Source of the DNA: Diadema antillarum
Lineage: Eukaryota
NCBI RefSeq assembly: GCF_040938485.1
Contig: NW_027272270.1
Span: 372,001 to 436,000, forward strand
DNA length: 64,000 bases
Direction: 5' to 3'
Shown here: positions 8,186 through 50,686 of the stretch, piece after piece
Position numbering within the stretch: position 1 is the stretch's first letter
Layout of the letters: each line of letters starts with the position of its first letter
Translations under genes and position numbers: made by a program
The notes under the pieces: model-generated
Seen by the model: the letters and a program-made list of their open reading frames with translations, nothing else
Databases searched by the model: none
What the model was told of the DNA's origin: nothing

Positions 8186-8256
8186 GGTGACTCCAAACTA
8201 GTACTATTCACTGAGGGGCTGCGCCCCTCAGTGAATAGTACTAGTTTGGAGTCACC
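8186..8256. repeat. Perfect hairpin, 34-bp stem, 3-nt loop
   Basis: GGTGACTCCAAACTAGTACTATTCACTGAGGGGC-TGC-GCCCCTCAGTGAATAGTACTAGTTTGGAGTCACC. Confidence 0.95.
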
Positions 8257-8258
8257 TC

Positions 8259-10004
8259 GGGTGCACGTCACGAGACCGACACCCACGAGTCATACAGCCC
8301 ACAAGTTATACAGCTCACAAGTCATACAGCCCACGAGTCATACAGCTCACAAGTCATACAGCCCACCAGTTATACAGCCCACGAGTTCGACACTGAGTAA
8401 ATAAAGCCCACGAGTTCGACATCAAGTAAAATAAGCCCAGGAGTTATACGGCTCACGAGACCGACACTACGCACAAAAGGCTCATGAGACCGACAGTAAG
8501 CAAACAAAGCCCACGAGACCGACACTACACTTAAATGGTCCACGAGACCGACGCTACGCATACAAGGCTCACGAGACCGACATTACGCAAAAGAGGTTCA
8601 CGAGACCGACACTAAGCAAAGAAGGCCCACGAGACCGACAGGATGAACAGCGCCACCTATAGACCAATAAATTGTATAGGGTGTCCTGATAATAGCATAG
8701 GAAGATATGAGAGATGGAAAAGAAGAGTTGCCATCTCCGGCAGGGTGTTACCCCATCGGTTGCCCCCCCCCCCCCCCCCCCCCCCCCGAAATGATCAGGA
8801 TCTTTAATTGTGTTTGCATGGGTGTGTGTTTGTGAAGAAAAAAAAAATGAACAAAGTACAGTAAAAGTGTGTAACAGATCTTTCCACAATAAACCTGCGA
8901 GGGTGTTGATTCAGTATTAATAAAAAATAAAAAAATAACGTAATCGTCTATTAATGTAGCGTTAGGAATTCGGAAAAAACCAGATGCATCCATGAAAACA
9001 GCTATTGTACTTCACGATAAAATGTACTGTTCGGAGGCGAATAACACAAGCACAAAATTGAGCTGAATCTCTGTGATGTAAAACGTTTTAATCAATAGAA
9101 TTGCATTATAGTTACAGAGAAAATTACAAATAGATCTTACTGCAAAACGTCAAAGCAGGAGGGTAGAATATCTAAAATAGAATAAGTAACTAGTGAATCG
9201 GGAAGGAGAAGAGGTAAAATTTATTTCTTGTCCATCTTCTAGCTAAAAACTGGGAAAGCCTATTAGAAATAGCACGATGGCATTATCAAAGCCCTAAAAT
9301 TAATCCATACATCGTTATTGTCCTCTTTTAAATTCATTTGTGTTTTTTTTTGTCTCTTTTTGGGGGATTAAGAATACTAATTCTTCTATTTATTTCTTTT
9401 TTTGGGGGTGGGGGCATGAAGAATACAATTCAATTTTTCTACTTGATAACAATGTCGCTCCCTGACACACTTTCCCCCCTCCCTAGAAGTATGTAGAAAT
9501 ACATATTTGATGACGGTCATAATTATGTAGATGGTCACCATCTTTCAATTGATAGGGTTACGAAATTACACCCGCCAGTATGTTATTTTTCCGTTCATGG
9601 AACACCCTGTACAGGTGATTGACATGTAGATGGCGCTGTTTATCCTGTCGGTCTCGTGGGCCTTCTTTGCCTACTGTCGGTCTCGTGGGCTTTCTTTGCT
9701 TAGTGTCGGTCTCGTGAGCCTTTATTGCTTAGTGTCGGTCTCGTGGGCCTTTTTTGCCTACTGTCGGTCTCGTGGGCTTTCTTTGCTTAGTGTCGGTCTC
9801 ATGAGCCTTTATTGCTTAGTGTCGGTCTCGTGGGCTATGTTTCTTAGTGTCGGTCTCATGAGCCTTTAGTGCGTAGTGTCGAACTCATGGGCTGTATGAC
9901 TCCTGAGCCGTATAACTCGTGGGCTGTATGACTCATGGACCTATTATTGATGTCGGTCTCGTGGACCGTATGACTCGTGGGTGTCGGTCTCGTGGGATGC
10001 CCCC
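8259..10004. mobile_element. Foldback DNA transposon with ~400-bp modular TIRs and 8-bp TSD
   Basis: TSD GTCACCTC at 8251-8258 and 10005-10012. The termini are GGGTGCACGTCACGAG and the reverse complement of GGGGGCATCCCACGAG. The arms are built of repeated CACGAGACCGAC / GTCGGTCTCGTG modules. Absent from the paralogous CYP-D intron 3. Confidence 0.9.
8677..9609. mobile_element. Probable Tc1/mariner-type non-autonomous element nested at the foldback axis
   Basis: Termini TA|TAGGGTGTCC and GGAACACCCTG|TA, with TA on both sides. The foldback arms run up to these TAs. Confidence 0.55.
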
Positions 10005-12866
10005 GTCACCTCTGCCCATAGTTTTAACAAGAAACTCTCAAGGCCAAGTATATTTGTATACTATAATTGCAATCATTTTGATATTGGTAATTGTCAATCA
10101 TCGAGGATGATCTTTAGTAGGGAAAACGTTCATAGATAATTCATATGAATGAATATACAACGACAATGAGCAATAATTTATAAACACATTTTTCTTCTAT
10201 GAAGATATAAGAGTCTACGTCTTGACGTATATACACGTTTAAGTCAAGCGCTTTTACGGTTTATTGTCATCAACAGGCGATTAATGTGCTCATTAGCGGA
10301 ATACCTTCTTCATAAAAAAAAAAGGTTTGTCGTGATTCATCAAAACATAAAAGATTAAGAATACTTGACCAGTAAATAAGACGAGGTGAAGGAAAGAGTA
10401 TTGTGACGTCATTATCCAGCAGATAATGCGATAGCCTTGTTTCAATACGTGCCTCCAGGAGGCATCCTGTTTTGTTTCGTGATAGCTTGGCTCAGGGAGG
10501 TGGGAAGAGATTCCCATCTCCCTGCTTAGGCTATATAATGATGCTTCATTTCACAGCTATCCTTGAAACCAGCCTCCCTTTCTCCCTTTCTATTTAGATA
10601 ACCTCTCCTTCAATAGTCTAGCTCCTCCAAAATGTCCTCTCAAAAGATAAGTGTTTGGGTGATGTGGTTCACTGACTATGTTTGGTATCTTTTAAGAGTC
10701 ACTTGAAGCGAAAGAAGGGGATCGTCCGTAATTGTCCGAATACCTGGGCGCCGCCGTGTTTGCAATGACCCGCTGCAAGGGACTATTTTACCTTGTTTAC
10801 ACCACACACTTCGCGAGAAGTGAGGTGGAACGCAGCCACTCCCGACATGGGAGACCTCGGTTCTATTTTCCGTCAGAGGGATAGAATGTGCTAGCTTAAT
10901 CCCAATCACAGAGAGAGCATTATGATATACACTACCTTTGGTTCCAGGATATCCTATCTTCACTATGAGGAAATAATCATAACGCTGAAATTATTTATCC
11001 AGCAGGTCGCTCGGGCGTGGTTACTCGGAGTCACGTACTCACCCGTCGCCGCGTCCAACCTCGCCTGGTGACTCTCGATCTGTTCGTTGAAGATCTTCTT
11101 CACTATCTCCCATGACGAGAGCAAATCCCGCCATTTCTTGGAGAATTGCATGATCGGCCAGGCGGACGGCACGAGTGTCAACAAGGCTCCCTCGTTGCCA
11201 ACCATGAGGTGGCGGACGTTTTCCATGAGCTCGCTGGCCGAGTCTGACCCATGTTCCTCTCGCCTCTTCATGACAAGGGTGCAAATTACGTTGGAAGAAG
11301 TCACCCCGAGGGCTGTCCGAGGATCTATCACTGAACCTCCGGTGCTCTGTGGAAGAAATATGGGGGAGGGGTTGGAGTTAATTCCACTGTAACGATGGTG
11401 TTTCATGAAAATTAATTGATGTCAACAAACCTTACTCAAATAAAAGTCACTCCATAAAGCATAATCTTTACTGATCTTGTCTTTAAAGTAAAATCAAACG
11501 AGGTCATTCGTGATTCCTCTCTCCCCCACACCCTGTACATGCAGTATTTTTTTCTGTTTCTGTGTATAATTTCTTGAGGATAGCTAGTTTTAAACAGCTT
11601 TGTCGCGATGAAAGGGCTGTCATTTCATCAAGAATCATTACACATGCTTATAGTGACGGCCCCTGCGACGTGGAACATGTCACGGAAGAGAAAATGGCAC
11701 GATCTATTTTGATTTGTTTCTACCTAATATATTCCGTTTGTTTTTAAAACTTGCCATTCCGTCCCTTTTGTCTTTGAACTTTCATTTGTACAGCGTATTC
11801 TTGGAAAAAATAAATTGTAGAAATAAATTGGAGCTGATAATGCGGAGGTAACGACTAGAAAGTCTGCATGAATAACGGAAGCGATGATGAATATGCATAG
11901 CAAAATAATATACCCCCTCCCTACTCCAAATAAAGGGTAATGAACTACAACCTTGAAGTACTTGACGAGGTGGTTGACTTCTTCCTGGATGAGTGGTTCA
12001 AGGGACACCTTTCCAAATCCCATACCTCTCAGGGTGGTGTGAGCGAACTTACGGTGCTGTTTCCACATCTCGTCAGCTCGACTGTCGAAAATACCTGGAA
12101 AATATCCATTCAGAATATATGTATACACGTAGGCACTAATATTTCCGCATTTACAGAATCCCCTTGTATATTTGAGGTAAATTACCCTTTGATATCAGGA
12201 CAGCAAATGACTGCATAATTCACGTCAGCGAATACCTGCAGGTATATGGCTTTAAAATACTATAAGTAGACCGAACTGCGACTAAGCTCACTACGAAAAT
12301 CAAACATAATAATTGTTATTCAATATCGAATTGAGGTATAAACCAAGCTGGTATAACTTTTTTTTTTCTTCACATTTATACATGAGTTTTTAATATATTA
12401 TAAAGGTATACCTCTCTAGTTCTACTTAAAGATGAAGTTTGGCTGAATTTGACCCGAGAAATAAACTAACTTTGGTCATAAACACTAGCCGTAATTTTGC
12501 AATCCCTGTCGCGGCGCAGCTATAGCAGCTATTCTAAATTACAAATTCAATGCACATCTATCAAGAACTGCAACAGAGCAGCGCGACTTAATTTTCCCTT
12601 TATGTAATTTCTGGATGAGAAAAAAAAATCATGAAAACAATGTAGGCCTACACATCCACCAATTTTGGTGGCTTGACATCTATTTCTCGTGGAATTTCTG
12701 GAGGGGAGACCTCTGAATTGTCGAGCATATTGCTGTAGGTACCGATACAATATGGTCGTGATAGCCACAGCCTCATACTCAGTGATAGCTCCTAATTTTA
12801 CTATCACAACTACAGTGTACAACCATTTTGCAATTAACTAAACATTCTTGTTAGTTCAGTTGCAAA

Positions 12867-12935
12867 CTACTATACTACTACTACTACTACATTGTACTAC
12901 TACTACTGCTACTACTACTACTACTTACTACTACT
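12867..12935. repeat. (TAC)n microsatellite in CYP-A intron 1
   Basis: Direct reading. The paralogous tract at 55196-55262 and 56059-56088 is split by the solo LTR. Confidence 0.9.
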
Positions 12936-31584: not shown

Positions 31585-34500
31585 TTACTTGGCAAAGACC
31601 TTCTGAAGCTTGTCCTTGTGCACCCAGGCGGCACCCCCTGCACCCGCCAGAACGACGCAGGTCCCAACGAAACGGAGAAAGCCCGAGACCGACGGAATGA
31701 ATTTCTCCTTCCACGACACGGCAAACGGCAGGGCGGGCATGTCCTGCGAGAAGTGGTAATGCACAACAAAGTTAAAATGTTATACAGCTGATCGGTTTGC
31801 ATACGTGTGCTTGCATGCATTTTACCATGAAACCTCTAATCCTGCTGATACGTCCATTGTCTAAATCTACCTCATCACACTTTCTCTCTTTTTGTTCAGG
31901 CTTGCCCTTTAATTTTTTTTTAATTTTCTACTCTCTTTCTTTTTCTCTGTTCTCACCATGAAGTATTGGTAGCTATGCCTTTCCTCCCCCTTTTTCTTTG
32001 TTTTTTTATTTCTATTTTTTTTTTTAACATTTGCCATTCACCTCCTGTCTCTATGAAAGGTACAAAAATATATCAGTGATGAAATAATGTGCATACCCAA
32101 TAAAGCAGTGCTTCTCAACCAGTAGGCTCTCTCAGGTGAGCCACGATGTCGGCCAAAAATGAAATAAAAAAGGGTTCTTATTCAATATCAGTGGGCCTCA
32201 AAAAAAAATAAAATAAAATTGCGAGAGCCCAAGTGGGCCTCGGATTAAAAAGGGTTAAGAAGCATGGAAACAGAGGGTGTTTATTCCTCTGTATTTGAAA
32301 AAAAAAAAATTCAAGAGATATGTGTTGACTGATGATGCCTGTGTTTCCTGGTAAGACTCACATTCAAGACAGCCATTTTGAGGCAACGATGGTGCGTTGT
32401 GTTTGTTGGAGGGCTGATATCAAATGATCATGACTATTTACCACCAACACACTGAATGACCTGTAATCTTTCACACAGATCTATTGCATCATTAATTCAT
32501 TTACTTGAATAGGAGGATCAAAAATGAGGATGGTATCAGTGATAATGATGATGGTAGTGAAGATAATGATATAAAGATGATAATGATGAATGCCAACTCT
32601 ATCCAACTCTATCCAACTCTATCTGACTTTGAATTTCCAATAAATCAATGTTAAGTTTGTACACACTTGACTGATGTGTTAAGAGAGTTTTTTCATCCTG
32701 GTGGTTAAAAGGTGCTATATAAATGCATGTATGATGTTATGTTATGATACCAATAACTAAGAGTATAATGATGATGATATGAAAATACTGATGTGAAGTA
32801 GGCTGATGATTAGTAAAAAAGAAATTGCTGAAAATTATGACAATGCTGCAAAAATAGATAAAAAGATTAAAAAAAAACCAAAACTGACCACTCCAGCAGC
32901 TGTTGCTTCAAAATCTTTCACATTACCAGTCTCACCTGTGCTTCTGGTTCTTCCTGCCATACTTCATCCCCGGATATTTTCCCCATGTTGTGCAAAATCT
33001 GTACAAGAGACATGCAAAATCATTGACTGAAGTCATGTGACAGCTAGGTCATGTGACAGTCAGGTGACAGGTGGTCCTCGATTGACATGGAACAATCACC
33101 AGCAAGTAAATCCTCTTCACCCTTCATCCTTACCCCTTTCCACCCTCCTTCTTCCCTTATTCTCATTCCTCCCTCCCCCCCACCCCCAATGATATTTCTT
33201 TCTTCTTGACCTTAATCACCCTCCTCCTCCACCACATCTTCTATGACTTCCTGATGTTTACATATTTCCAACTTTCGTGGTCCATATTACAGGGATGCCA
33301 ACCCTGAAAATAGCACTGCAGAGTCCTGAGGCCCGAATAGGTGCATATTCGGAGGAAAAACAATATTCTTATCTTACTTACAACAGTCAAGTGCAATAAT
33401 ACAATTTGAGAAAAACACTATTTTCCATGAACCTTGCAGTGCTCTTGACAAAGAAAAAACAACAAACAAACAAAATACAAAATAATGTGAAAAAGGAACA
33501 ATTGGCATCTCTGGTCCACTGATCACCTCAGCACAGTCTATAAATCACTATAACATCCACACAGGATTTGCATTCAAATCTGTGAATTGAGTCTCTTGTA
33601 ATGAAGATACAGGTGTACTGCATGCAAGATGAAGGCCCATACAAAGGTATTCAAATGCATTTTACCATTGCATTTACATCTTATTTCTATCTTTCTTTTC
33701 TCTGTGGCACATACAATTTCTGTCCAGACACTCTAAAAAAATTTACACTTTATCTTCTGAGTATTCACAATCCACTTGCTTGAGATTCAAGTTATTTGAC
33801 CTATTAATTAATTTTCATCTCTTTCTCTCTCACAGATGTATGTACTAGGAAGAATGATAGTCCTTGGATAGACCAATACAAAGCCTATCACACCGCAACT
33901 TATGAGGCTAATCAATATACAAATGACGCACAGGTCTGAGTGCGTCAGTCGGAATTGTGTGCATAAGGTAACTATGGAATGCTTAACCCATGAGGCGAAG
34001 CCGAGTGGTGGGTTTAGGCTATAAAATTCCATAGTTACCGCATGCACACTATATTCAGACTGACGCACGAAAAGACATGTGCGTCATTTGATTTATAGAA
34101 TGGGTAATTTTCTTGCCAAAAACCTATTTTTCTATCGTGTTACCCGATGACAAAATGACTGGATGCATTTGCTTTTGGCTTGCCGTAAACGAGCATGCAT
34201 CAGTTTTTACTGGACGCACGGCCAGCCATGCAATTAGTTTTTACTGGACGCATGGCCAACCTAAGTGCGCGAACGCTTGCTTAGTGCGCGAACCTTTGTT
34301 ACAAGTACGCGTACTCTTGAAAAGTGCGCGATTACATGTTTACCACTGTGACTCGGCGTGCGGCCAGTAAAAATCAACGCATAGCTCTCGACCAGTCAGA
34401 TCGCAGGATTCTCGCTACCCATTTTATAACATAGACTTTAATAATCACTGTGCATGCTACATTTGAATAAAAAAAAGAAAAGAATGACTACCGACCTCCC

Positions 34501-35447
34501 TGGCAGCCCTTTCTCCAGCCTGAACTGCCCCATCCATGTATCCAGACCATTTAGTGGCTGTCTCTGTTCCAGCAAAGTACAGCCGACCGATAGGTTCTCG
34601 CAGGGCTCTGCCCAACAGAAGTACAACAAAGGAACAAGTTCTAGGAAATATTTCTAGTATTTCTTGTGCATCTTGGCAATATCACATTAACAAATTCTTT
34701 GGGAAAAAAAAGCAACAAAGTCCCTAGCATGCAAATTACTGTTTATAGACTCAAACATCAATATTACTTAATAACAATTGATCTATTTGAAAATGACTTT
34801 CACTTCTTATGCTGGAAGGTACTGTCTACGTAAAAAAAAAAAAATAGATAAATAAAGAAAAAAATAAAGAAAAATGACAATAATTATTGTGTTAGAGAAT
34901 AATGTCTAGAGTAATCACATTCACAGGAAATAAGGAAATTCTGGGATGAGACATTTCAATTTTCCACTGCAGAAAGAGGAGGTAATTTAATGTCAGACTG
35001 TACACAATGATACATGGTAACTGTAATAACTCGTTAATGATGGACATTTCTTTTCCATTTATCAATTTTTCTGCACTACAATGGCAGCCTCAAGAAATGG
35101 TATGGAGGTGTATCCTATTACCGAATGATTTTTGTTTTATTGCTCCAAACGGGCAACATTATGCAATAATTCAGCCAAAAATATCCTTTAGATAATTGAA
35201 ATGCTGATGACTTTAGCTGTAATGAAAATACTTGAAAAATAAGCCAACTTCTAGAAAAAATGCGTATTTCAAATAACCCTTCTACAAAAATTGTCTCTTT
35301 TTACTGACGCAAATCGTATTGTATTACCGAACGTGCGCCCTCTGTGTGGGGAAAATTGTACATTGTATTTTCGGTCAATGTTTATTAACGCAGGACAACG
35401 AACATCGAAATTTTAGCAATTATTGCGTAAATTTGAGGTAAATTACG

Positions 35448-35480
<33 letters not shown>

Positions 35481-38400
35481 CAGTTTAGCAATTTTCGGCA
35501 CTGGCTTCCCCTGTGAGATAACAGCGCGTAGTGCAATGAATGTGTATTCGAGTTGTTGTATGCGCTCCATTGACAAAGTACGCGTTCGGTAATAGGATAC
35601 CGTTCGGTGATAGGATACCTGACTATACTGCTGTCATTACAAAATCCATCATGACAGAAACCAGTAACAGTTTGTTGTGAAAAGTCAATTATTTCAATTT
35701 TCCTCACACTCATCTATGATATCAATGACTACGTCATTCATTGAAAACTGTCAAAAACACGCCAAGATCACACATACCATGCCCAAACTAACCTAACAGT
35801 TAGATGTGCACAATAAGGATCAATACATTGATTAGTCACAAACAGAGACTTAATTCAGACAATTCCATTGTCAGGAACTTGGTTATTCAGCAACTGTTTT
35901 GTCTTAATCCTCTCTGGCTCACACTTATAAATTTTTACAGCTGCACAGTATATCATGCTAGGATCTTGCTTTTGGCTGTGATAGAGATACACTCACTTGA
36001 GCACGATACATACCGTAAAGCAAGAGAAATATTCACAAATTGCAGTTGACGACCTTTTTCGCTGCATGAAAATTTTGCTTATTGCCACTGGCGTCCAACG
36101 CATTACAGTGTAGACAAGAACTTTCGCATGCAGTTTGACTACCCAAATCTTTGTTGGCTCTTGTGAAATTCGCAAAATTAAAATGCACATGAACATTTCT
36201 GGTTTTACATTTCTGCTTTCTGTCATCCAATCATGAGACAAACATTTGACAATTCTAAAGTAGTATCTTAAAGACAAAAAAATCTTTCTATTACTAATGT
36301 AAAAAAAAAGAAGAATAGTTATTGAGTTATTACTAATGTTTACAACAACAACAAAAAAAAAACGAATACAGTCAACCTCACCTACGTCGAAACTATTTGG
36401 ACTGAAGAAAGAGCTTCAACTTAAGAGAAAAATCAGACTTATGAGGGATTAAAATCAATAGAATATAAAGTGAAGAGGACTTGAAAAGACCTTCGACTTA
36501 GGCGATTACTCGTCTTGTGCAAGGTCGACTGTAATAAGCAAGGTTGACTGTACTTTTTTGAGGATCTCCCAAAATGACTGTACCTTTGAACCTACAATCT
36601 ATGACTTATTGTCTGTCTCCCATGAATTCCAACAAATTTAAACTGGGCACCGGTGACTATGTAACTCACTTCCAGTATTTTGTGATGATGCCTGGAACGG
36701 TGTAGCCCACGTAACCTCCACCAATGTATGGCTCCTCCATCCAATTCTTTTCAATGTACATCACAGGCTTGAAATGACATGGACGAGGGAACAGGAACCA
36801 ACACCAACACACACAAACACACACACAAATAAAAATGAAGGAATACACAGTGATAAACCAAACAAAAATCAACATCAAACCCACATCCTATCTCCCTACT
36901 TACCAGCAAAAAATTGCCGTATGTTGTACTCAGAGCCCTTATATCTACACAATGTATACAGGTCCACAAGGCCTGGGTAGACCTTTCTTTGCCTTTGTTT
37001 GCGCAATGAAATCACATGCCATGCGATTTGTATAACATTTATAAAATAAAAAAAAATCATTGCATTTTTAGAATCAACGCAAAGAACATGAATGACATTT
37101 GACCCAGAAGAAATAAAAGGATTATGGGAAAGGTGAGTTTGAAAGGGACATGCCTGAGCAGTAGATATCTGTCAAGAATGTGCTTTCGAAAGGTTGCAGT
37201 CCTTTGGTAATGAACATGCATCTTTATACATGACAACAGAAAATTGCAGGCCTGGGGTGATATTCTGAAAATCTTCCTAAGTTTTTTCCTAAGTTTCTTC
37301 CTAAGTCAGAAACTTAGGAAGTGCCTAGGAAAGACAAAATTGGTATTCTGAAATTTCTTCCTAGGCACTTCTTAATGCAAATTAGGCCATCCTTATTCCC
37401 GCCCACGTCCTTTCCTAAGCCAATACGAAATGCCGTATCATAAGGAACTAACCGATGTCTGCCAATGACAATCGCATATTACTATGACGTAGGGTCAAAT
37501 ACACGAGGGCGCGGGATGTCCCCTTTCTCACGCTCATTTCGCGCATCAAGGTACATGTGCGCGCAATGACTGACAAGCGCGCCTATCACGATGCTTGCAG
37601 TTTGCTATTCTTAACAACGTACTTAGGACAGGGGTGGAGCTTTCCTAAATATTTTCCTAAAATTCTTTCCTAAGTGCATTCTAGAATACCAACTTCTTCC
37701 TAAGTCAGAAATTTACATATTCCCGCCCCCTCCTAATTTTCTTCCTAAGTCTACTTAGGAAGAAACTTAGGAAGATTTTCAGAATACCACTCAGGAAAAA
37801 ATCCTGACTTAGGAAGAAATTTCTTCCTAGGAAGGATTTCAGAATACCACCCCTGGGGTGGTATTCTGAAAATCTTCCTAAGTTTCTTCCTAAGTTTCTT
37901 CCTAAGTCAGAAACTAAGGAAGTGCCTAGGAAAGACAAAATTGGTATTCTGAAATTTCTTCCTAGGCACTTCTTAATGCAAATTAGGCCATCCTTATCCC
38001 CGCCCACGTCCTTTCTTAAGCCAATACGAAATGCCGTATCATCAGGAACCAACCAATGACAATCGCATATTACTATGACGTAGGGTCAAATACACGTGTG
38101 CGCGACATGTCCCCTTTCTCAAGCTCGTTTCACGCATCAGAGTACATGTGCGCGCAGTGAATGACAAGCGCGCCTATCACGATATCTGCAGATTGCTATT
38201 CTTAACAACGTACTTAGGACAGGGGTGGAGCTTTCCTAAATATCTTCCTAAATTTCTTTCCTAAGTGCATTCTAGAATACCAACTTCTTCCTAAGTCAGA
38301 AATTTGCATACTCCTGCCCCCTTCCTAAGTTTCTTCCTAAGTTTAGGAAAAAACTTTGGAATAGACTTAGGAAGAAACTTAGGAAGATTTCAGAATACCA

Positions 38401-40487
38401 CTTAGGAAAAATTCCTGACTAAGGAAGAAATTTCTTCCTATGAAGGATTTCAGAATACCACCCCTGGGGTGGTATTCTGAAAATCTTCCTAAGTTTCTTC
38501 CTAAGTTTAGGAAAAAACTTAGGAACAGACTTAGGAAGAAACTTAGTAAGATTTTCAGAATACCACTTAGGAAAAAATCCTGACTTAGGAAGAAATTTCT
38601 TCCTACGAAGGATTTCAGAATACCACCCCTGGTTTGTATGAACAGGTACTGCTATCTTATGTTATTGTGAACAGTCTGAAAGTTACTGAGAAGTCACAGC
38701 AAGATTTTTTTTCTTCTATTTTTGGAAAGAAATACTTTTAGTTTAATCTCACGATGAACAAGTCATCATCTGCATGAATTGAGACAAACTTTCACTAAAA
38801 GAAATTACTTTTCCAAGATTTAGTGAATTCAACATTTAAGTGCATGTTTAACTTTATCTTCACAATCGGAATAGAATCAGACCAACAGAATGGTAAAGGT
38901 CTTATCCAAATCATACATACAGCGCTGGAGCTATGGAATTTCACAGTTGCACATGCTTTCTATGAAGAAGCACTTGCTACTGGTTGCCAACAAAATTATG
39001 TGCACAGTAGCTAAATAAATGGTGATCACTTCACAACTCTCCTGTCAGTGTGCACACATGAACATCATTCAAATCACATTTGTGGTTAATGATCTAGCAA
39101 CTTCAACACCATACCCCTGTGAGTCAACATTGTTGGGTTATCAAAAAAGAAATACTTTGATCCAAGATACAGGTTCTTCTCTTTCATTTCATGTAAAGTA
39201 AAAAATAATAATAAAATAAACTTACTATGAGAATTCTTAGGCAATGATATCACCTCATGTAATTTCCATTTGTGGTAGCAATATATATTGCTTTCTTGTA
39301 TAAAACAAAAACAAAACAACAACATAGAGCCAGACTGTTATTTATTTTTGTGCCTGAATTTGATGAAACTGCTATGATTCTGTCTGTTTGAGTGTACTGT
39401 GAAGTCAAATTGAACACGAACTGGAATTGCATTTTTATAATGTTTCACTTAAAGGTATACATTGCCTTTCTTGCCCATTCATGTACAAAGTATACTCATT
39501 CTTTGGTATCTGATTTGCGGAGCAAAGGCATGGCACATTCTTGTCCTTATTTCAACCATAAAGGTGTCCCTTTGACGACTTTATCATCACAACTGAATTA
39601 ATTTTATAACTGCAGGTCTGCCAACATTCCCACATCCAAATCAGGGAGATTCCACACAGCAATCAGGGAGATATCTGTGTATTACATGCATTTCAATGGG
39701 CAAAAATAATTCCCAAATCAGAGAGATTTTATTATTCTCTTATTCAGGCAGGGGCAGATTTTGACATTTTCAGGGAGACTCCCGCAGAATCAGGGAGACT
39801 TGGCAGCTCTCTAATAGCAAGTGAATTACCTTCAGGGCCTCATCACTCTTCAGTATCTTGGCATAATGTTGACAGATCTTCTGTTTTCTGAAGGCAGGAA
39901 TGATGAAGCAAGAATAGCACAGGGGAAAAAAAAGAACACAGCAGTTAATCCTTATATCAAGAGACATAACTGATTTATTGCAAGACTCCAAAGGTAGATC
40001 AGTGCGTCTAACATAATTTTTGCAAAATTACTGTTCAACATGGTAACCAATGGATGTAGATCAGGAAACACTGCAAGAAAGAAAAACAAAAGAAAACAAA
40101 ACAAACTAAGTAAAGTGAATAAGAAGGCTACAAACTATCCACAGACTGGCAGTTATACACCTTGAGGGGGGGTATTTCATAGACATTCAAGGTGCACAGA
40201 ATGATACTGTGTCGTTATTCTAGCTCACAAACCAAGAAACACACCATATCCCTTGTCTTCTTAAACATTCTTCTCATCTGACAATTAAAAAAAAACATGA
40301 TCAACTTGTCTTGCAAGACACAAAACTTATCTAAGAGAAGACATATGCAAAGTTTTTGTTGAGATTAAAAATATTTCATTGCTTAGCCTGCAGAAAAAAA
40401 AAAAAGAGGCAGCAAAATCAGACAACTTCTTACCGTTCTTCTTTAGAAACTTCACAGCATTCTCTGGCCGCATCTCCAGCTACGAAC
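31585..40487 (-). CDS. MAO: Flavin monoamine oxidase, 3' six coding exons (equivalent to MAO exons 10-15); 5' exons absent from window
   Basis: Exons 40487-40434 (54), 39887-39830 (58), 36767-36670 (98), 34607-34496 (112), 32998-32936 (63) and 31743-31585 (159), all GT-AG and in frame. Translation: [180 protein letters not shown]. It has the MAO signature [27 protein letters not shown] and a C-terminal hydrophobic tail. The exon sizes match human MAOA exons 10-14 as I recall them. Confidence 0.95.
36369..36531. mobile_element. Tc1/mariner (pogo/Tigger-like) MITE in MAO intron
   Basis: Termini TA|CAGTCAACCT and AGGTCGACTG|TA. A second copy of the right end lies at 36541-36552. Confidence 0.6.
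37255..38628. mobile_element. Tandem trimer of a PIF/Harbinger-like MITE separated by single CTG target triplets
   Basis: Units 37255-37852, 37856-38463 and 38467-38628, each GGGTG(G/A)TATTCTGAAA...TTTCAGAATACCACCC. CTG occurs at 37252, 37853, 38464 and 38629. Internal CTTCCTAAG/CTTAGGAAG motifs. Confidence 0.85.
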
Positions 40488-41120
40488 CTGCGGTAGAACG
40501 GAGGTGTGAATGGAATTTTACATCTCTGTCTACTTGCTGGAAACAGCTTTGATTTGTCAACATTGAGACACTGACAAAAACAAAAGCAGAGTGTATCGTT
40601 AGCCACCGGATTGAGGAGAGTTTATGGTAACATGATGATGGAGTTTTATTGTCACGGAGGCAAGCCGCTGGATCTCAAGCAGCGTGGCTTCGGTGTAAGG
40701 AAGCTGCCCACGGTGTGATATGGATACCTGCTGGTCGCCAACGATCTATATCATGAAAAAAAAAAGAAATGAAATGCAAATTGATAATGATAACGTCATA
40801 GGCATGTATGCTGTACAACTGTATATACAAGTCCTGTACTTGCATATCTATATATCATACGTAAATTTTGAGCTTGATTGAAAGTCTGTTCGATGCAGAG
40901 GTAAACCATTACAAACAATCTTCAAACCTTTCGACACAAATAATCATCTTAAATATTACTGATCGGTCATAGGCCCTGTAATGGCAGAATTTGATACAAC
41001 GTGAAAAGGTGACCCAGTAGGCTTACAAGTGGCAATTCAGTTGGGAGACGAAAATGATCTCGCATCTAATTCGGAGTATGATATGCTACCTTCTATAAAT
41101 TTCAGTTCTGTAAATCAAGA

Positions 41121-41494: not shown

Positions 41495-42365
41495 CTTCTT
41501 TATCTCGACATGCACTTTCTGCTGGACGTCGGTATGGACGGCAAGATACTTGATGGCCCAGGAGAGAGTGAGGGAGATGGTGTCCGTGCCCGCCAAGAAC
41601 AGGTCCAGCAGGTCGTAGTGGAGCGCCTCGATGGTAAACGTGTCAGGGTCAGACTTCCGGTGCACTAGGTAGGCATCGAGGAAATCATGGATTTCCGGTT
41701 CACCTGAATAGTTGAATATTGATGATGATATTTGAATAATTGAATAGTATTGATCATGCTCATATGCACAAAGAAAGTGGGTAGGATATCATGAATGAAT
41801 AGTGATGATAATGACGATAATGTTGACAACACCATTCTTCAGGATCTATCCTATGACCTCTATTATTTCTGAGATATATCAATATCTTACCTTGTTTAGC
41901 TTAAAATCTTCATTACATATTACTAGCAGAGGATACAGGTGTATTCTGTAAACGTTGTAAAGGTTCCGATAGCAAAACTTGATTTCATCATGTTAAAGAA
42001 AAATTATATGAAGTATAGCAAAAGGATGACAACAAATAATCTGATTCTCAATGTTAATGAAACTAATTATATTACTGTATTTGGAACTCGAACTATGCAG
42101 TGTGAATCAAAACAGGAAATCCAACCTTAAAGGGCTACTATTTCATAATCGTCAGCTATGGAGAGCGCAATATTGGTTGTGAGGAAAGGGGAACTCTACC
42201 TCTTTCTATTGATACCTAATTATGTTGACAAATGTCATATTGTGTGACTGAGCACATGAACTTAAGACAGCAATGGTAAATTGCACTTTTTCCTAATTTT
42301 TTGAGGGTTATTATTGTGAAGGAAAAATGCATGTCTCACTACATGGATGAGATATATTAATGAAA

Positions 42366-42546
42366 GTAGTCAAATTAACAGGCCAGCTTGCATGACTGCA
42401 GGTTTGTGTTTAGGGTTTCTTCTAACCAAGTTATCGGACATGTGGTCATGCATGTTAAAGGTTATGGACCATAAAATGTTAGAAAAAAAAATCCTAAACA
42501 CACACACGCCTGTATTCATACCGGCTGGCCTGTTTATTTGGCCACT
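42366..42546. repeat. Degenerate ~180-bp inverted repeat (old MITE-like)
   Basis: CAAATTAACAGGCCAGC...TGTGTTTAGGGTTTCTTCTAAC is mirrored by GTTAGAAAAAAAAATCCTAAACACA...GCTGGCCTGTTTATTTG. Confidence 0.6.
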
Positions 42547-44279
42547 TCCAGTGACAGATCTCATCCATTCAATGAGACATGCATTGTTCCTTCATGTCAC
42601 ATTAGATCACAGCTTCATCCCGACATTTCGACAAACCAATTTCATGAATTTGAATGATTATACGCAGTAGCCGCTGCATGCTACGGAGATTAGAACCAGC
42701 ATTTGCGATGTTGGGAAATTTGTCAATCACTTGCAGTGCACATTACACTTCGTAATCGGGCGGCGGCGGTCGCGGTGGTGATCAGATGGGATCAATGAAA
42801 GATCTCTGTTAGTAGTCCATGTGTAGTAGGGCCCTGTACTGACCATGCAGGAAGGTGTGCTCTCACCACCTTCCTGCACTGACCTAAATGTCTATATTAA
42901 GTACGAGGAAGAAATTATAATGCTGACATCATTAATCCAGCAGGACGCTTGGATGTGGACACTCGAATCACAAATAATTGTACTCACCAGTGGCAGCGTC
43001 CAACCTCGCCTGGTGACTCTGGATCTGTTCGTTGAAGAACTTCTCCACTGCCTCCCGTGACGAGAGCAAATCCCGCCATTTCTTTGAGTATTGCAGGATC
43101 GGCCAGGCGGATGGCACAAGCGTCAACAAGGCTCCCTCGCTGCTAACCATGAGGTGACGGACGTTTTCCATGAGCTCGCTGGCCGAGTCCGACCCATGTT
43201 CTTCTCGTCTCTTCATGACAAGGGAGCAAATGACGTTGGAAGAAGTCACCCCGAGAGCTGTTCGAGGATCTATCACTGAACCTTCGGTGCTCTGTGGAAG
43301 AAATGGTTGAGGTCCCCACATGTAGAATCAATTCAAATAACAACAGAATCATGTTGGCTCACAAATCCTTTTTAAAGACACTATGGACCTGATGTACAAA
43401 AACGCTCTCCTTAACAATCTGAAGCAATTGGCGTCCTTAAAATCTGAAAATTAAAGACAATGATGATTGATACATATTGTTCTATGACCGAACAATCTTT
43501 GAAAAACAAAATATATCGGAATACACTGCAGCACTGACAACTATAACGGAAACGCAGAGTAGCAATAATTTATGGTCACTTTAAGCATAATTTAATCTTT
43601 TATGCCTATATTAGTGATTCTTCTTTTCTCCTCACCCTTCACTTGTACCTCTCGTCCTTCTTTTGTGTGTAAATCTTTTAGAACAGTTTTTTCTTTCTTT
43701 CGTTTCATCACGAAAAAAAAAAGAGCTCTCATCTTATCAGACATCATTACGCAAAGTGGAACATAATATCTTAGAAGAGATGACAAAATCTAACGTATTT
43801 TGCATCTACATGATCTATTCAATATTTGTTTGTATATCTTGTTTTTTCGTTTTAAAAATACCACAATCTCTATTGTTATATTTTCATTGTACATCACATA
43901 AGGCTACATACTTGCAATTATTAATGCATTACAAATTCTGTAGTTATTATAACTATTGCTTGAAAAAAAAAGTTGTGAAAAATTGATATTGAGGAAGTAA
44001 CGACTAGAATATTTACAAGAATAACATAAGCGATGATGAACGTATACACAACAAATATATCCCCTCCCTATTCCAAATAAAGGGTACTGAACTACAACCT
44101 TGAAGTATTTGACGAGGTGGTTGACTTCTTCCTGGATGAGTGGTTCAAGGGACACCTTTCCAAATCCCATACCTCTCAGGGTGGTGTGAGCGAACTTACG
44201 GTGCTGTTTTCACATATCGTCAGCTCGGCTGTCAAAAATACCTGGAAAATACCCACGAAAAATAGAAGAGTACCCAACA

Positions 44280-44464
44280 AAGAAGGCCCACGAGTTCGAT
44301 ACTATGCCAAGTTCGACACCTATAGGCCTTGTACCCAGTGTAAGACCCGTGGGCCTTTATGCCTAGTGTCGGATCCATGGGTTTTATATGCCTGTTATCA
44401 AGCCCATGGGCTGTGTGACTCGCGGGCTCTATGACTCGTGAGTGTCGAACTCTTGACGTGGTAT
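44280..44464. mobile_element. Deleted remnant of the same foldback family as 8259-10004
   Basis: Contains CCCACGAGTTCGAT and GTGTCGAACTC modules. The right end GTGTCGAACTCTTGACGTG resembles the foldback terminus. Confidence 0.6.
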
Positions 44465-44486
44465 CCGTTGTAGGCAAGTAGGTATA

Positions 44487-44772
44487 CTCTCTAAAAAAAA
44501 TCGAGTGAAAATTTTCACTCTAAAAAGAGTGAATACAAAAAAGAGTGAATTTCGAGTGAAATTGTGAATTTTGAGCGAAAATGTTCATTTTCACTATTTT
44601 GGAGTGACGTCAGGGATCACTCGAAGATTTTGGAGTGATCCCTGACGTCACTCCAAAATGAGTGAAAATGAACATTTTCGCTCAAAATTCACTCCAATTT
44701 CACTCGAAATTCACTCTTTTTTGTATTCACTCTATTTAGAGTGAAAATTTTCACTCGATTTTTTTTAGAGAG
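44487..44772. mobile_element. Near-perfect 286-bp palindromic MITE with TA TSD (Tc1/mariner-type)
   Basis: TA|CTCTCTAAAAAAAATCGAGTGAAAATTTTCACTC ... GAGTGAAAATTTTCACTCGATTTTTTTTAGAGAG|TA. The arms pair almost to the centre (about 44630). Confidence 0.9.
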
Positions 44773-47700
44773 TAACCTTGTATGGTCCATGGTATAACTG
44801 ATACCACTGTCCTGATACATCACTGACTGTTACTAGTTGCCTGACACTTATCATTACATGCAGATAGTGTAGTTGCATACTGTTGCTACTTTACCATAAC
44901 CATCCCTGCAACATCTATCATATTTAATACTGATGTAATGGTACCACAGTACAGTTGCGGAGACGGGGGGGGGGGGGGGGGTAACGCCCCCACTTTCTTG
45001 TTAACTCTATACAATCATTAAGTGGGCCCCTTCATTTTGTAAAAACGTAGCACCTGCCCTCCACATACACAAACACTGAGATATGCATGAACGAACATGC
45101 ATACACACACGGGTATACAATAAATAGGCCTACTAACATGATTTATTCGAAATCAGATCTGCTTTTACCCGATTCCGCATGTATAATTTAATTCTAAATT
45201 GTTAAAGAAAAAGAAATCCCCGTGTGCTGTTACAACTTATCCCACCCATTCCCCAATATACACGTATTATTCTTGTTTGCTTTACTGGTAAGGTTTTACC
45301 GTTTCCATCAGCTAACAGATCGAGGGTCTTATCGTCTAAGCTTCTCTCACATGGAAAAAGAAATACATAGTTCGTTTCCTTATGGTGACGATCGAGTTGT
45401 AGCTATTGGATTTCTATACTCACCACAATTATTACCAATCATACCACTCCATTCACAACCAACATCGCGGAGTCACCTACCGAGTCGCTTCGAGTTCATC
45501 TTCATGAAAATGACGGTCTCCCCTCGGTCAATGAAATCGTTTCCCGCTCTTATTGTGACCTCCCTGATCTCTTCCCATCCATTGACCACGACAGCGGGTC
45601 TGCTTCCGAGATAGAGCGTGTACACGGAGCCGTACTCTTTCCCAAGCTCATTCAGCATGTTGAGAAAGGCGTCGTTTTCTGGAAACGACAACAGGTTCCC
45701 AAAGAAAGGCAGAGGTCGAGGACCTTTCGGTAGTCGGCCTCTTGCCCTGGTCTTTAAGATGGTCCAAATGACCACTAGAGTGAGGCTGCACAAACATAAC
45801 GTTGTCCAGTTTGACTCGAGAAAGCCCAGGGTCTCCATGTTGCGTGTACAACGAGAGACTCCGTATCTTTTCTTGGTTTATCTATTGGGCTTCAGCTTGG
45901 TTTTATATCTATTAGGCTTCAGCTCGTCCGAAATGACGCTCCGGCGAGTCGCAGTGGACAACAAAGCAGGACCTAATAAACGTTGACCTTTCATGCATGA
46001 AAAACTATAGAAAATGTCTGATCAGAGAAGTGACCTTCCTCGTCTGACCAATGAGCTGGGCACTACACGGCCCAGTGCATTTATGCAATATCGATCTCTG
46101 CCATGGTAGGGAGAATCCCGAGTTTTGTTGGGTATGTGAAGGGATATGTTTGAAAGCAGGCGCAGCAAACTTTTCCGAAGAACGTGTTTTTCATTGTTCA
46201 GTTTAAATCAAATTATACTTTATTTCCATCAAACAAAAGGTAATAATTCGCCCACAAAGGAGAGGCCCAATTAAGGGCCATAGTGATTTTGATTGCTTTT
46301 TTCCAACCCGGCAACTTAGGGAACCGCATTAGGGAAAGCCTGACATCTTGTAGCCTTGTATTTCGCTTCTTTTATTTGTTTATCTGTTATCACTTGTAGT
46401 GCCTTGCAAATGCCGAATAAATAAGTAAATAAATAAATTATGAATAAATGAATAAATGAATGAATGAATAAATGAATAGATAAATAAATGATAATAATAA
46501 TAATAATGATGATAACAATAAATACATTTGTCAAAATATATTGTTACACAATTTGAAAAAGTGTCTGCATGCTATAACGAGTAATATAATCTTCTCTACG
46601 GTACAAATTACATGTACTCATTAAGTCTTTCTGATGACCGACGATGATAATGATGATGTGTTCATGGTAACATAAAAAATGATAAGGATGATGTTGCTAT
46701 ACTACTCCATTAATGCTGTTATCAATGACGCTCATAATGACGAACATAATTTCTATTGTGCCATTTTCTGTACGGAACGCTCAAAGGCGCCAAATGACGG
46801 TGATAATTAATGATGACAACAATAATGACATGACCTATAATCATCAAAGCCATCATCATCGTAATGCTAATTTGTAATACTGGTCTTTAGTAACACAAAT
46901 ATGAACCTATTAAACTGTACAGCATTGTATGCATTGCATGGGTGACTATTATGCATGGATTTGTAATGACACGTGCTTGTGCCAGATACTTATTTGTATG
47001 ACCTAAACTTTCGTTTGACAGCAATATAAATAGTTTCTCTTTTGACAATCACTTCTCTTTCGAAACATTTGTTTGTTTTAGAAACTTGCGCACATGGTAG
47101 AAAAAAAGAAAATCATACATTTGGGGGCATGCGCGCCTGCGCGTCAGTGAGAAATCTGCTGGCGTCAATCAATGTTATGTCAATCAGTGAGTTGACTCTT
47201 GTAAAGGAGATTTTAGTGACAACAGTTTTTGTTATTCCCTTTGATCCCACGTTTGATACCTCCACGCAGAAATACTGAAGTATGTACGGGTATGTAGCAA
47301 AACTTGGGCTGCCCAACAGATAGGAAGACAATTTATTGATCCATGTGTCATTGCATCATGACTACCGTAGTCACACTCTTCGCCGTCCCTTCTCAAGAAA
47401 TATGAGAGGTGCAGGTACAGACACGGAGATGTGCGAATAAAAATTGCGCAGAATTGTTCCCCCCCCCCCCCCCAAAAAAAAAAAAAAAAAAAATCGAAAT
47501 TACTCGACCTTACATGATTTTACATTAATTAACATTATAAATGAATAAAGAACTATACTTGGAGATTATACCATATCAGTTCGATATGTCAGAAGTGATT
47601 GGAAAGATGATAAAATTGGCTTTTTAGTGAAGGTAAAACAGTTTAAAATACTTTCACGACTACAGCTCAGATTTATATACACCTTGGCACATATTTCTGG

Positions 47701-49531: not shown

Positions 49532-49873
49532 TTAGTCATTCCAGGGATAAATCTGGATTCCAAACGGTGCTGGGTCACGGGTCAAATCCATAAAACCTTC
49601 GAAGGAGACTGATTCGCTGGGCGGAAGTGAAAACTTGACCTGTTGCATGATGGTCGTGAAGAAGAGGAATAATTCCATCTTGGCCAGCTGCTCACCCATG
49701 CAGACGCGTTTCCCTTGAAAGAAGAATACAAAACAAACAGTATTGGCAATTATTTGAGTAAAGACAAAATCATCAATGTGCAATATGGGCAGATAAATCA
49801 TTGGTTTCCTTGACTTAATGTATAAGGCGAACACTTGTGGATTTGCAGTTAGATTGTGAGAGGTTGCTGATGT

Positions 49874-49909
<36 letters not shown>

Positions 49910-50232
49910 TTTAAGACGATGTATGAGCACTTGGTGTGATAAACATGAGCGAGTAAGGCTCTGTACTAATTCCCGATCCTAAGCCTTTGAAGGTAGTTTC
50001 GAGCTTTGCATAGTGATAAAAGTGGGCCAAAAAGGACCATCTTCAGATAAGTGAGAGACTAACTCGAAAAAGTTGGAAGTGAGAAACGCCATTCCATCCA
50101 TTATCGCTGCAGTGGGCCGCAAACTACAGCCATCAAAACGAAAGTTGTATCACTATGTGCTTGAAACTCCAGGTTAAAAATTCCTATGAATTGCCATCTA
50201 TACAAAAAGTATGGAGGGGACACCGCCCATGT

Positions 50233-50263
<31 letters not shown>

Positions 50264-50646
50264 GGGGGTCAATTTACCGGCAGAGAATGGGAGGAAGTTC
50301 TTCGGTTGCTTGACGACAGTCCCATCATCCTCCAAGAATCTCTCAGGATTGAACTTATCTGGGTCAGTCCACACATCTGGATCACGATGCAGAGACCTTT
50401 CATGATGAAAATAAAACATTTTATTCATTAAAAGAAATCCACAAATGTTTCGTTTTCTGCCAAGCTACGATGAGTTAATGCAACTTTCTATGCAATGAAA
50501 ATCAAATAATTGAATGCAATCATTATTGTAGGCCCAACAACAAATTTAATCACGAGACAGCTTGTCCAAGATGAGGTGTGAATGCGATTTCATTCGGTAC
50601 TTCAAATTTTTCGTGTTGCACCTCGTTAAATATTCTCCCATTGGTT

Positions 50647-50686
<40 letters not shown>

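What the first reader, a model, noticed from the sequence alone, without database searches (positions are those of the whole stretch)
40434..40745. P450-monoamine oxidase junction: CYP exon 5 fused to MAO intron 9 on the same strand
Seen: CYP-C exon 5 matches CYP-D up to ...EIQRLASV (about 40653). It then switches, with no gap or TE, to unrelated sequence (frame ends TIKLHHHVTINSPQSGG*). About 165 nt later comes the acceptor of MAO exon 10, and all six MAO exons are intact. Model 1: a tandem-duplication breakpoint (unit from CYP exon 5 to MAO intron 9) puts an orphan MAO 3' half behind a CYP promoter, and predicts a full MAO right of the window. Model 2: MAO exons 1-9 lie right of the window and the C/D/B' block (over 23 kb) is nested in intron 9, with CYP-D on the host strand. 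Splice phases permit in-frame chimeras: a CYP exon 5 donor (phase 2, e.g. CYP-D 51103) to MAO exon 10, or CYP exon 4 (phase 0) to MAO exon 12. CYP-C itself stops in exon 2, so a C-driven chimera would be non-coding or an NMD target. Any fusion protein would lack the heme Cys and the MAO N-terminal FAD fold.
Basis: partly seen in the sequence, partly recalled or inferred. Interest (0 to 1): 0.8.

Follow-up and report, generated by a model that had tools for sequence, protein, structure and literature searches.

The report
Duplication breakpoint joining P450 and MAO
In the sea urchin Diadema antillarum, a segmental duplication broke inside a cytochrome P450 gene and inside a monoamine oxidase gene, leaving a dead half P450 butted against an orphan MAO tail: a real but ordinary by-product of gene-cluster duplication.

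Summary
The window is Diadema antillarum contig JBFRCO010001382.1. CYP-C matches its paralogs down to 40651-40653, in the middle of exon 5. The sequence then becomes single-copy MAO intron, and 163-166 nt further on lies the acceptor of a 54-nt MAO exon 10. Exons 10-15 are all intact. The same junction lies on the second haplotype contig, so it is not a misjoin.

The gene order is P0007, A, B, spacer, MAO 3' part, then the junction, then C, D, B'. C pairs with P0007 (dS 0.07) and D pairs with A (dS 0.10). C-P0007 homology ends exactly at the junction.

DNA contigs, most likely from the reference animal, fork at 40654 into the C continuation and an unlike one. The MAO side has about 1.5-1.9 times the depth of C-specific contigs. 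A near-identical MAO copy with an unbroken intron 9 therefore exists somewhere. I could not locate it.

An orphan that had drifted neutrally since the duplication would stay intact with probability about 0.005, so gene conversion is inferred.

There is no evidence for a chimeric transcript. C carries a TGA in exon 2, and the spliced CYP RNA contigs carry CYP-A letters. RefSeq models C as a 348-aa stub and the MAO piece as 134 aa. This is a known kind of event and of low interest.

The parts
40651..40654 (.). Breakpoint. These four bases (TGAC on the minus strand) can belong to either partner (microhomology).
   Evidence: C-P0007 homology runs down to 40651. Identity of the MAO-side DNA contigs with the window runs up to 40654, where X2's contig ends and X1's contig continues unlike the window.
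40651..40745 (-). CYP-C exon 5, first half only (K-helix EIQR kept). The second half of exon 5 and exons 6-7, which carry the heme-binding Cys, are absent.
   Evidence: D's exon 5 is 182 nt.
40488..40650 (-). Remnant of MAO intron 9, with no other copy in the window. RefSeq's CYP-C reading frame runs into it and stops at 40599-40601.
40434..40487 (-). MAO exon 10 (54 nt).
   Evidence: RNA joint 39887/40434 in X7.
39830..39887 (-). MAO exon 11 (58 nt).
36670..36767 (-). MAO exon 12 (98 nt). It has GGGY where vertebrate MAO has the covalent-FAD GGCY.
34496..34607 (-). MAO exon 13 (112 nt).
32936..32998 (-). MAO exon 14 (63 nt).
31585..31743 (-). MAO exon 15 with the stop codon and a hydrophobic C-terminal tail.
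   Evidence: RefSeq's 134-aa Amino_oxidase CDS spans 31585-36740.
41495..45838 (-). CYP-C exons 4-1 (41495-41703, 42988-43291, 44099-44241, 45481-45838), with TGA at 44210-44212.
49532..56687 (-). CYP-D, intact, 7 exons, 498 aa (XP_071478579.1). It is the unit-2 partner of CYP-A.
7198..13547 (-). CYP-A exons 4-1. The gene is intact (XP_071478564.1, 498 aa); its exons 5-7 lie left of the window.
18794..24760 (+). CYP-B, the unit-1 partner of B' (60.8 kb to beyond the window's right end).

Best explanation
The junction is the novel joint of one tandem segmental duplication in a P450/MAO gene cluster of Diadema antillarum.

Inferred ancestral order, left to right (CYPx, CYPy and MAO on the minus strand, CYPz on the plus strand): CYPx, CYPy, CYPz(+), spacer, MAO.

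The duplicated segment began in the middle of exon 5 of CYPx and ended in intron 9 of MAO, 163-166 nt upstream of exon 10. The two ends were joined over 4 bases of microhomology.

The left unit keeps an intact CYPx (today the P0007 gene), then CYP-A and CYP-B. It ends in an orphan MAO 3' part (exons 15-10). The right unit starts with a CYPx copy that lacks half of exon 5 and exons 6-7 (CYP-C), followed by D and B'. It should end in the complete MAO gene.

CYP-C cannot be an enzyme, because it has no heme-binding region and carries a TGA in exon 2. The MAO tail cannot be one either, because it has no FAD-binding N-terminal part.

Shown: the junction, its presence on both haplotype contigs, the paired gene order, the end of C-P0007 homology at the junction, and a second continuation of the MAO intron in reads.

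Inferred: that the second copy is the complete MAO gene and where it lies; and that gene conversion from it keeps the orphan exons intact and nearly identical.
For: 1. Identity and context. RefSeq protein P0003 (XP_071478578.1, D. antillarum) is the CYP-C model and maps the window to JBFRCO010001382.1, with window y = record 372000+y. Just left of the window lie the intact P0007 gene and the 3' exons of an intact CYP-A.

2. Pairing. Synonymous divergence over 369 codons is 0.069 for C-P0007 and 0.096 for A-D, against 0.19-0.24 across the pairs. A+B aligns with D+B' at 81-90%.

3. C-P0007 DNA homology (84-96%) runs from 46424 down to exactly 40651 (alignment).

4. The same junction, and the same TGA in exon 2, lie on contig JBFRCO010000933.1, which is colinear with window 59145-39525 at 98.9%. 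The assembly keeps both haplotypes of one male and was built from HiFi reads (PMC13511894).

5. Reads. X2's contig covering 40166-40654 ends exactly at 40654, which in a k-mer graph marks a fork. X1's 738-nt contig fits 40120-40654 at 99.4% and then runs on for 177 nt unlike the window. MAO-side contigs have depth 33.4-36.8 (X2) and 8.1-9.6 (X1). C-specific contigs have 17.6-20.7 and 4.4-7.3. That is about 1.5-1.9 times, or 3-4 copies against 2.

6. Noncoding divergence between the units is d = 0.095 with 16 indels per kb. If the six MAO exons had drifted neutrally since the duplication, they would stay intact with probability about 0.005. Yet the MAO side appears as a single sequence class. 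This fits homogenisation that stops where the duplicated unit ends.
Against: - The complete MAO copy was not seen. I could read only to window 66687.
- X1 and X2 carry coded names. That they are the reference animal's MiSeq and HiFi runs is my inference, from shared contig borders, a depth ratio of about 3.5-4, and the paper's list of runs.
- Contig depth is a rough guide to copy number, and it does not separate 3 copies from 4.
- No listed contig bridges 40654|40655. Exon 5a is shared with paralogs and breaks the k-mer graph there.
- The MAO side is practically identical between copies while the rest of the units differ by 5-15%. This needs an extra assumption: gene conversion, or a later second duplication.
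- Contig 933 holds about 81 kb more than the window between CYP-B and MAO exon 11. Its content is unknown. If the second MAO-side copy lies there, the simple two-unit layout is wrong.
- The C lineage shows 9 nonsynonymous to 8 synonymous changes, fewer nonsynonymous than expected for a gene dead from birth (binomial p about 0.06). Gene conversion from P0007 could explain this.
Confidence: 0.55

Rival explanations
1. A whole-unit duplication followed by a deletion. The cluster first duplicated with breakpoints between genes, giving [P0007 A B MAO1][C D B' MAO2]. A later deletion, joined over a few bases of microhomology, then removed MAO1 exons 9-1, the spacer and CYP-C exons 7-5b. In this reading the second continuation seen in reads comes from MAO2, or from an undeleted allele.
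For: It explains the same junction, the same fork and the same gene order. The intact MAO exons and the fewer-than-neutral count of nonsynonymous changes on the C lineage are easier to understand if both genes worked until recently. The two haplotype contigs differ by only 5 SNPs in 39.5-49.5 kb, against 2.52% genome-wide heterozygosity (PMC13511894), as expected for a young shared allele.
Against: It needs two events where one is enough. Both haplotype contigs of the reference animal carry the junction, so if the reads come from that animal the unbroken form cannot be an allele. The DNA contigs on the C side that I first took for a second allele carry P0007-gene letters at every intronic position that aligned unambiguously, so nothing points to an undeleted C.
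Confidence: 0.17
2. There is one MAO gene, with exons 1-9 to the right of the window. The block C/D/B' is nested in a giant intron 9, so the window's exons 10-15 are the working 3' end of that gene.
For: The MAO exons are intact and exons 10-11 are spliced in RNA. The RNA contig stops at the exon-10 acceptor, and no RNA contig lies on the intron remnant.
Against: It predicts one copy of the MAO side per haplotype and no other continuation at 40654. Both predictions are contradicted. RefSeq/Gnomon has no gene spanning the block and calls only a 134-aa fragment. It needs a separate event to explain why C is cut where its homology with P0007 ends.
Confidence: 0.07
3. An assembly misjoin of a MAO intron to a CYP exon.
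For: No listed read contig spans 40654|40655 with 31 letters on each side.
Against: The junction is identical on two separately assembled HiFi contigs that differ by SNPs, indels and an 81-kb length difference nearby. X2's contig ends exactly at 40654, which means two continuations exist in the reads. The two sides share only 4 bases, which is too few for an assembler to join on.
Confidence: 0.02

Closest known systems
Partial and chimeric genes at tandem-duplication breakpoints in Drosophila (PMC4069613, PMC5460883; titles and abstracts seen only)
   Same: A tandem duplication whose two ends fall inside different genes produces one novel joint. That joint places the 5' part of one gene next to the 3' part of another on the same strand, and both parent genes stay intact at the outer ends.
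   Different: Here the 5' partner is dead (TGA in exon 2, and the break removes the exon-5 donor), and no chimeric transcript was seen. The duplication is old (noncoding d about 0.1) rather than segregating.
The human RCCX module (C4-CYP21-TNX); from my own knowledge, not checked here
   Same: A tandem segmental duplication of a P450-containing module. It leaves a P450 pseudogene and a truncated copy of the neighbouring gene (TNXA), and gene conversion continues between the modules.
   Different: Different genes. In RCCX the truncated neighbour lies on the opposite strand. Here the truncated P450 and the orphan MAO tail are co-oriented and directly abutted.
Genes nested inside introns of a host gene
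   Same: C, D and B' would lie inside MAO intron 9 if Model 2 were right.
   Different: The extra depth and the second continuation of the MAO side argue for two MAO 3' parts rather than one host gene.
Large presence/absence and hemizygous variation in broadcast-spawning marine invertebrates (mussel pan-genome, PMC7653742; title and abstract seen only)
   Same: The two haplotype contigs differ by about 81 kb next to the junction.
   Different: The junction itself is present on both haplotype contigs.

Membership tests
Cytochrome P450 (PF00067), for CYP-C as a working enzyme | P450 fold recognised by the family profile | tested here: met
   Exons 1, 3 and 4 hit PF00067 at E 2.5e-14, 1.2e-06 and 1.5e-14. 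C matches D and P0007 at 83-99%.
Cytochrome P450 (PF00067), for CYP-C as a working enzyme | K-helix ExxR, followed by the PERF region and the heme-binding FxxGxRxCxG loop | tested here: not met
   EIQR is present. The gene ends 8 codons later. D has PERF and FSAGKRVCMG in exons 6-7, and C has no such exons.
Cytochrome P450 (PF00067), for CYP-C as a working enzyme | Open reading frame | tested here: not met
   TGA at codon 130 on both haplotype contigs. RefSeq avoids it with a non-homologous splice.
Flavin monoamine oxidase (PF01593; MAO-A/B type), for the window's MAO part | C-terminal part of the amine oxidase fold | tested here: met
   Exon 13 hits PF01593 at positions 407-441 of 443 (E 6.8e-10). 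The best solved relatives are rat and human MAO-A/B (E 2e-17).
Flavin monoamine oxidase (PF01593; MAO-A/B type), for the window's MAO part | N-terminal FAD-binding domain (exons 1-9) | tested here: not met
   No such exons lie between 40488 and the CYP genes. RefSeq's product is 134 aa. Nothing MAO-like was found in the 2.7 kb beyond the window. This was not searched with an N-terminal query, because none was available by reference.
Flavin monoamine oxidase (PF01593; MAO-A/B type), for the window's MAO part | Cysteine that binds FAD covalently (SGGCY in vertebrate MAO; from memory) | tested here: not met
   Exon 12 reads IGGGYVGY.
Flavin monoamine oxidase (PF01593; MAO-A/B type), for the window's MAO part | Exon plan of vertebrate MAO, with exons 10-14 of 54/58/98/112/63 nt (from memory) | tested here: met
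   The sizes are 54, 58, 98, 112 and 63 nt, all with AG/GT borders.
Tandem-duplication novel joint | Two adjacent units with the same gene order and orientation | tested here: met
   P0007-A-B and C-D-B', paired by dS and by DNA identity.
Tandem-duplication novel joint | Homology between the units ends exactly at the joint, on the unit-2 side | tested here: met
   The C-P0007 alignment ends at 40651.
Tandem-duplication novel joint | The unbroken parental versions of both partners persist in the same genome | tested here: inconclusive
   The CYP parent is found (the P0007 gene is intact). The MAO parent is only inferred, from the fork at 40654 and the 1.5-1.9-fold depth. It was not located.
Expressed chimeric (fusion) gene | RNA that joins exons of both partners | tested here: inconclusive
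   None of the 15 listed joints links a CYP exon to 40487; 16 further joints were not shown. There is no RNA contig on 40489-40659. The CYP RNA contigs carry CYP-A letters. Only contigs of one RNA run were laid, so rare forms would be missed.

The most novel reading that the evidence does not exclude
Read-through from the intact CYP-D promoter (or from CYP-C) is spliced into the orphan MAO exons. One route is the D exon-5 donor (which ends with two bases of a codon) to the exon-10 acceptor at 40487, which is in frame. This would give a protein with the N-terminal membrane anchor and first two thirds of a P450, fused to the last third of MAO with its C-terminal membrane tail. The orphan exons would then be kept intact by selection rather than by gene conversion.
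Probability: 0.03. Interest if true: 0.5.

Novelty: new member of a known kind. Interest (0 to 1): 0.22.

Why it matters
The main value is for annotation. XP_071478578.1 ('cytochrome P450 2G1-like', 348 aa) and the 134-aa amine oxidase product are the two stubs of one duplication joint, not genes with their own function, and they should not be counted as P450 or MAO family members.

The locus is also a clean natural example of how a P450 cluster grows by unit duplication. It shows a base-level breakpoint with 4 bases of microhomology. It may also show gene conversion that stops at the edge of the duplicated unit.

If the complete MAO copy is confirmed, the pair gives a simple test of how long an orphan gene fragment can be kept intact by conversion alone.

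None of this would surprise a specialist.

Tried and rejected
1. I first read CYP-A as truncated after exon 4. That was wrong. RefSeq protein P0010 is encoded 498/498 by the window plus the sequence to its left; intron 4 is simply long.

2. I took X1 and X2 for two independent animals, and the 'diverged' contigs on the C side for a second allele. From that I built a model of a polymorphic deletion. I rejected it for three reasons. The alternative letters are those of the P0007 gene at every intronic position that aligned unambiguously. X1 and X2 share contig borders and joints. The genome paper lists only HiFi and MiSeq runs of the reference male, plus two small Nanopore runs.

3. A search of protein representatives with MAO exon 15 (52 aa) found no MAO.

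4. The three word searches gave the CYP proteins of the species, but no B-type CYP and no MAO protein id. Because of this I could not walk right of the window with the look-up of encoding contigs. The spliced MAO peptide (180 aa) has no reference, and I did not type it in.

5. An exact look-up of a 48-aa ORF in the intron remnant found nothing.

6. The S. purpuratus orthologue locus (L006) has no MAO within 10 kb. The L. variegatus protein is not on record.

7. A recent tandem duplication with a large unit is rejected. The P0007 protein occurs only once per contig, and the units differ by about 10%.

8. There is no other copy of the intron remnant in the window or in the fetched loci.
Full report
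**What is in the sequence**

On the minus strand the window holds a CYP2-type exon reading ...EIQRLASV and then TIKLHHHVTINSPQSGG-stop. Aligned with CYP-D exon 5, similarity is high up to ...CCTCCGTG at 40653 and then vanishes. D's exon 5 is 182 nt, and C keeps its first 93-95 nt. From 40487 downward lies a 54-nt exon with a cag acceptor and a gtaag donor. It is followed by five more exons of 58, 98, 112, 63 and 159 nt, all with AG/GT borders. Together they give an open 180-codon reading frame that ends in a stop. Exon 13 matches Pfam Amino_oxidase, and its best matches among solved structures are MAO-A and MAO-B. The CYP pieces match Pfam p450. CYP-C has a TGA in exon 2.

**Where the window comes from**

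A word search with a CYP exon found RefSeq protein XP_071478578.1 of the sea urchin Diadema antillarum. It has 348 aa and its last 17 residues are the read-through peptide. Its locus places the window on JBFRCO010001382.1, with window y = record 372000+y. RefSeq calls three genes there: CYP-D (498 aa, identical to my own model), CYP-C (348 aa) and a 134-aa Amino_oxidase product that starts at a Met in exon 12. No gene spans the block.

According to the genome paper, this assembly (GCA_040938485.1) is a hifiasm HiFi assembly of one male. It kept both haplotypes (84% of BUSCO genes duplicated, 2.52% heterozygosity) and has no gaps (PMC13511894). The N runs in the window are therefore masked on purpose. 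I left them alone.

**The junction is not a misjoin**

A second contig, JBFRCO010000933.1, is colinear with window 59145-39525 at 98.9%, straight through the junction. It has no difference between 40481 and 40756 and carries the same TGA in exon 2.

**Wider gene order**

Left of the window lie an intact 498-aa CYP (the P0007 gene) and the 3' exons of CYP-A. I had wrongly taken CYP-A for truncated. The order is P0007(-), A(-), B(+), spacer, MAO exons 15-10(-), junction, C(-), D(-), B'(+). Over 369 codons, dS is 0.069 for C-P0007 and 0.096 for A-D, against 0.19-0.24 across the pairs. A+B aligns with D+B' at 81-90%. C aligns with the P0007 gene at 84-96%, introns included, from 46424 down to exactly 40651. 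This is the layout a single tandem duplication produces when its unit starts in the middle of exon 5 of the first CYP and ends in MAO intron 9. The left copy of the CYP stays whole. The right copy is born truncated and is butted against the end of the left unit.

**Reads**

One call each of the look-up of sequencing runs and read laying was allowed. X7 behaves as RNA. Its joints are 39887/40434 (MAO exon 11 to exon 10) and the CYP exon borders. X1 and X2 are DNA.

X2's contig over 40166-40654 ends exactly at 40654. In a k-mer graph, a contig that ends at the last shared base marks a fork. A merge with paralogous exon sequence would have ended it about 30 bases further on. X1's 738-nt contig fits 40120-40654 at 99.4% and then runs on for 177 letters that are unlike the window. 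So a second continuation of the MAO intron exists.

Identity on the MAO side reaches 40654 and CYP homology reaches 40651. The two partners therefore overlap by four bases (TGAC), which is typical microhomology at a rearrangement joint.

**Whose reads they are**

I first treated X1 and X2 as two other animals and built a deletion-polymorphism model on that. I withdrew it. X1 and X2 share many contig borders and joints. Their depth ratio (about 3.5-4) equals that expected for the HiFi and MiSeq runs of the reference male. The paper lists no other sizeable DNA runs. The contigs on the C side with 'other' letters carry the P0007 gene's letters at every intronic position that aligned unambiguously, so they come from the paralog and not from an allele.

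With that settled, C-specific contigs (28-39 differences from P0007) have depth 17.6-20.7 in X2 and 4.4-7.3 in X1. The MAO-side contigs have 33.4-36.8 and 8.1-9.6. The MAO side is thus present about 1.5-1.9 times as often as C, that is 3-4 copies against the 2 assembled junction copies. The additional copy or copies must carry the other continuation. This is what Model 1 predicts for the parental MAO gene.

I could not see that gene. The furthest I could read is window 66687, where B' turns out to lack exon 5 and is not annotated.

**Why the orphan exons are intact**

Noncoding divergence between the two units is d = 0.095, with 16 indel events per kb. Under neutral decay since the duplication, the chance that 544 coding bases and 11 splice dinucleotides all survive is about 0.005. 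In the reads the MAO side forms a single sequence class although it is present in 3-4 copies, while the rest of the units differ by 5-15%, and unevenly (84.5% to 95.9% along C-P0007). The simplest reading is gene conversion between the orphan and the complete MAO copy, which can reach no further than the end of the duplicated unit. This step is inferred, not shown. The alternative is a whole-unit duplication followed by a later deletion. It explains the intact exons, and the modest excess of nonsynonymous changes on the C lineage (9 to 8, against 3 to 7 for P0007), without conversion. It needs a second event, and nothing else points to it.

**Chimeras**

The phases allow them, but nothing supports them. 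C is dead and lost its exon-5 donor with the break. No RNA contig lies on 40489-40659. None of the listed joints enters 40487 from a CYP exon. The spliced CYP RNA contigs laid on C carry CYP-A letters at all informative positions, including the five mismatches in exon 5. The RNA contig for exons 11-10 stops one base past the acceptor, so its upstream partner is unknown. Because the two MAO copies look identical here, RNA cannot be assigned to the window's copy.

**Verdict**

This is a real duplication joint, resolved to the base. It is an ordinary product of gene-cluster growth: two gene stubs that RefSeq annotates as proteins. Interest is low. The open points are where the complete MAO copy lies, what the 81 kb extra on the other haplotype contig contains, and whether conversion really maintains the orphan exons.

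Noticed in passing
window 24809-24941: An interstitial telomere-type repeat, (ACCCTA) x 22, lies about 50 nt after the last exon of CYP-B, at the start of the spacer that leads to the MAO 3' part.
   Followed up: no
between window 24655 and 39525, compared with JBFRCO010000933.1 records 451395-548621: The other haplotype contig is colinear up to 24655 and again from 39525, but holds about 81 kb more in between. Its content is unknown. It could be an expansion of the 165/600-nt tandem array at 37251-38632, or it could hold further gene copies.
   Followed up: partly
window 39525-64000 compared with L002: The two haplotype contigs differ by only 50 SNPs in 24.5 kb (0.2%), and by 5 SNPs in 39.5-49.5 kb, against 2.52% genome-wide heterozygosity. 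The SNPs cluster at 49.5-51.5, 54.5-57.5 and 59.5-60.5 kb.
   Followed up: partly
window 60800-64000 and L007 (window 64001-66687): CYP-B' is not annotated as a gene on either contig and lacks exon 5. The sequence after its exon 4 aligns with the part of CYP-B that lies downstream of B's exon 5.
   Followed up: partly
window 24126-24277: The exon-6 match of CYP-B is split between two frames (24126-24197 and 24209-24277). On the other contig the gene is annotated with a 470-aa product.
   Followed up: partly
   Followed up: partly
window 40488: The RNA contig (X7) that joins MAO exons 11 and 10 ends one base past the exon-10 acceptor. This suggests more than one upstream partner in the RNA graph. 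The partners are unknown.
   Followed up: no
window 2039-2192, 16994-17122, 59146-59347: There are N runs in the window although the published assembly has no gaps, so they are masked on purpose. I did not fill them or look them up.
   Followed up: no
window 44350-44950 and 42150-42750: High-copy repeats lie inside CYP-C introns, with contig depth up to about 400,000 in X2. One DNA contig in X2 replaces 43695-44965 with 19 other letters (an insertion/deletion variant, or the paralog).
   Followed up: no
window 42861-44486 compared with the P0007 gene (L003 11045-12998): Identity between C and P0007 varies from 84.5% to 95.9% along the gene, and exons 3-4 are 99% identical. This patchwork suggests gene conversion between the two units.
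   Followed up: partly
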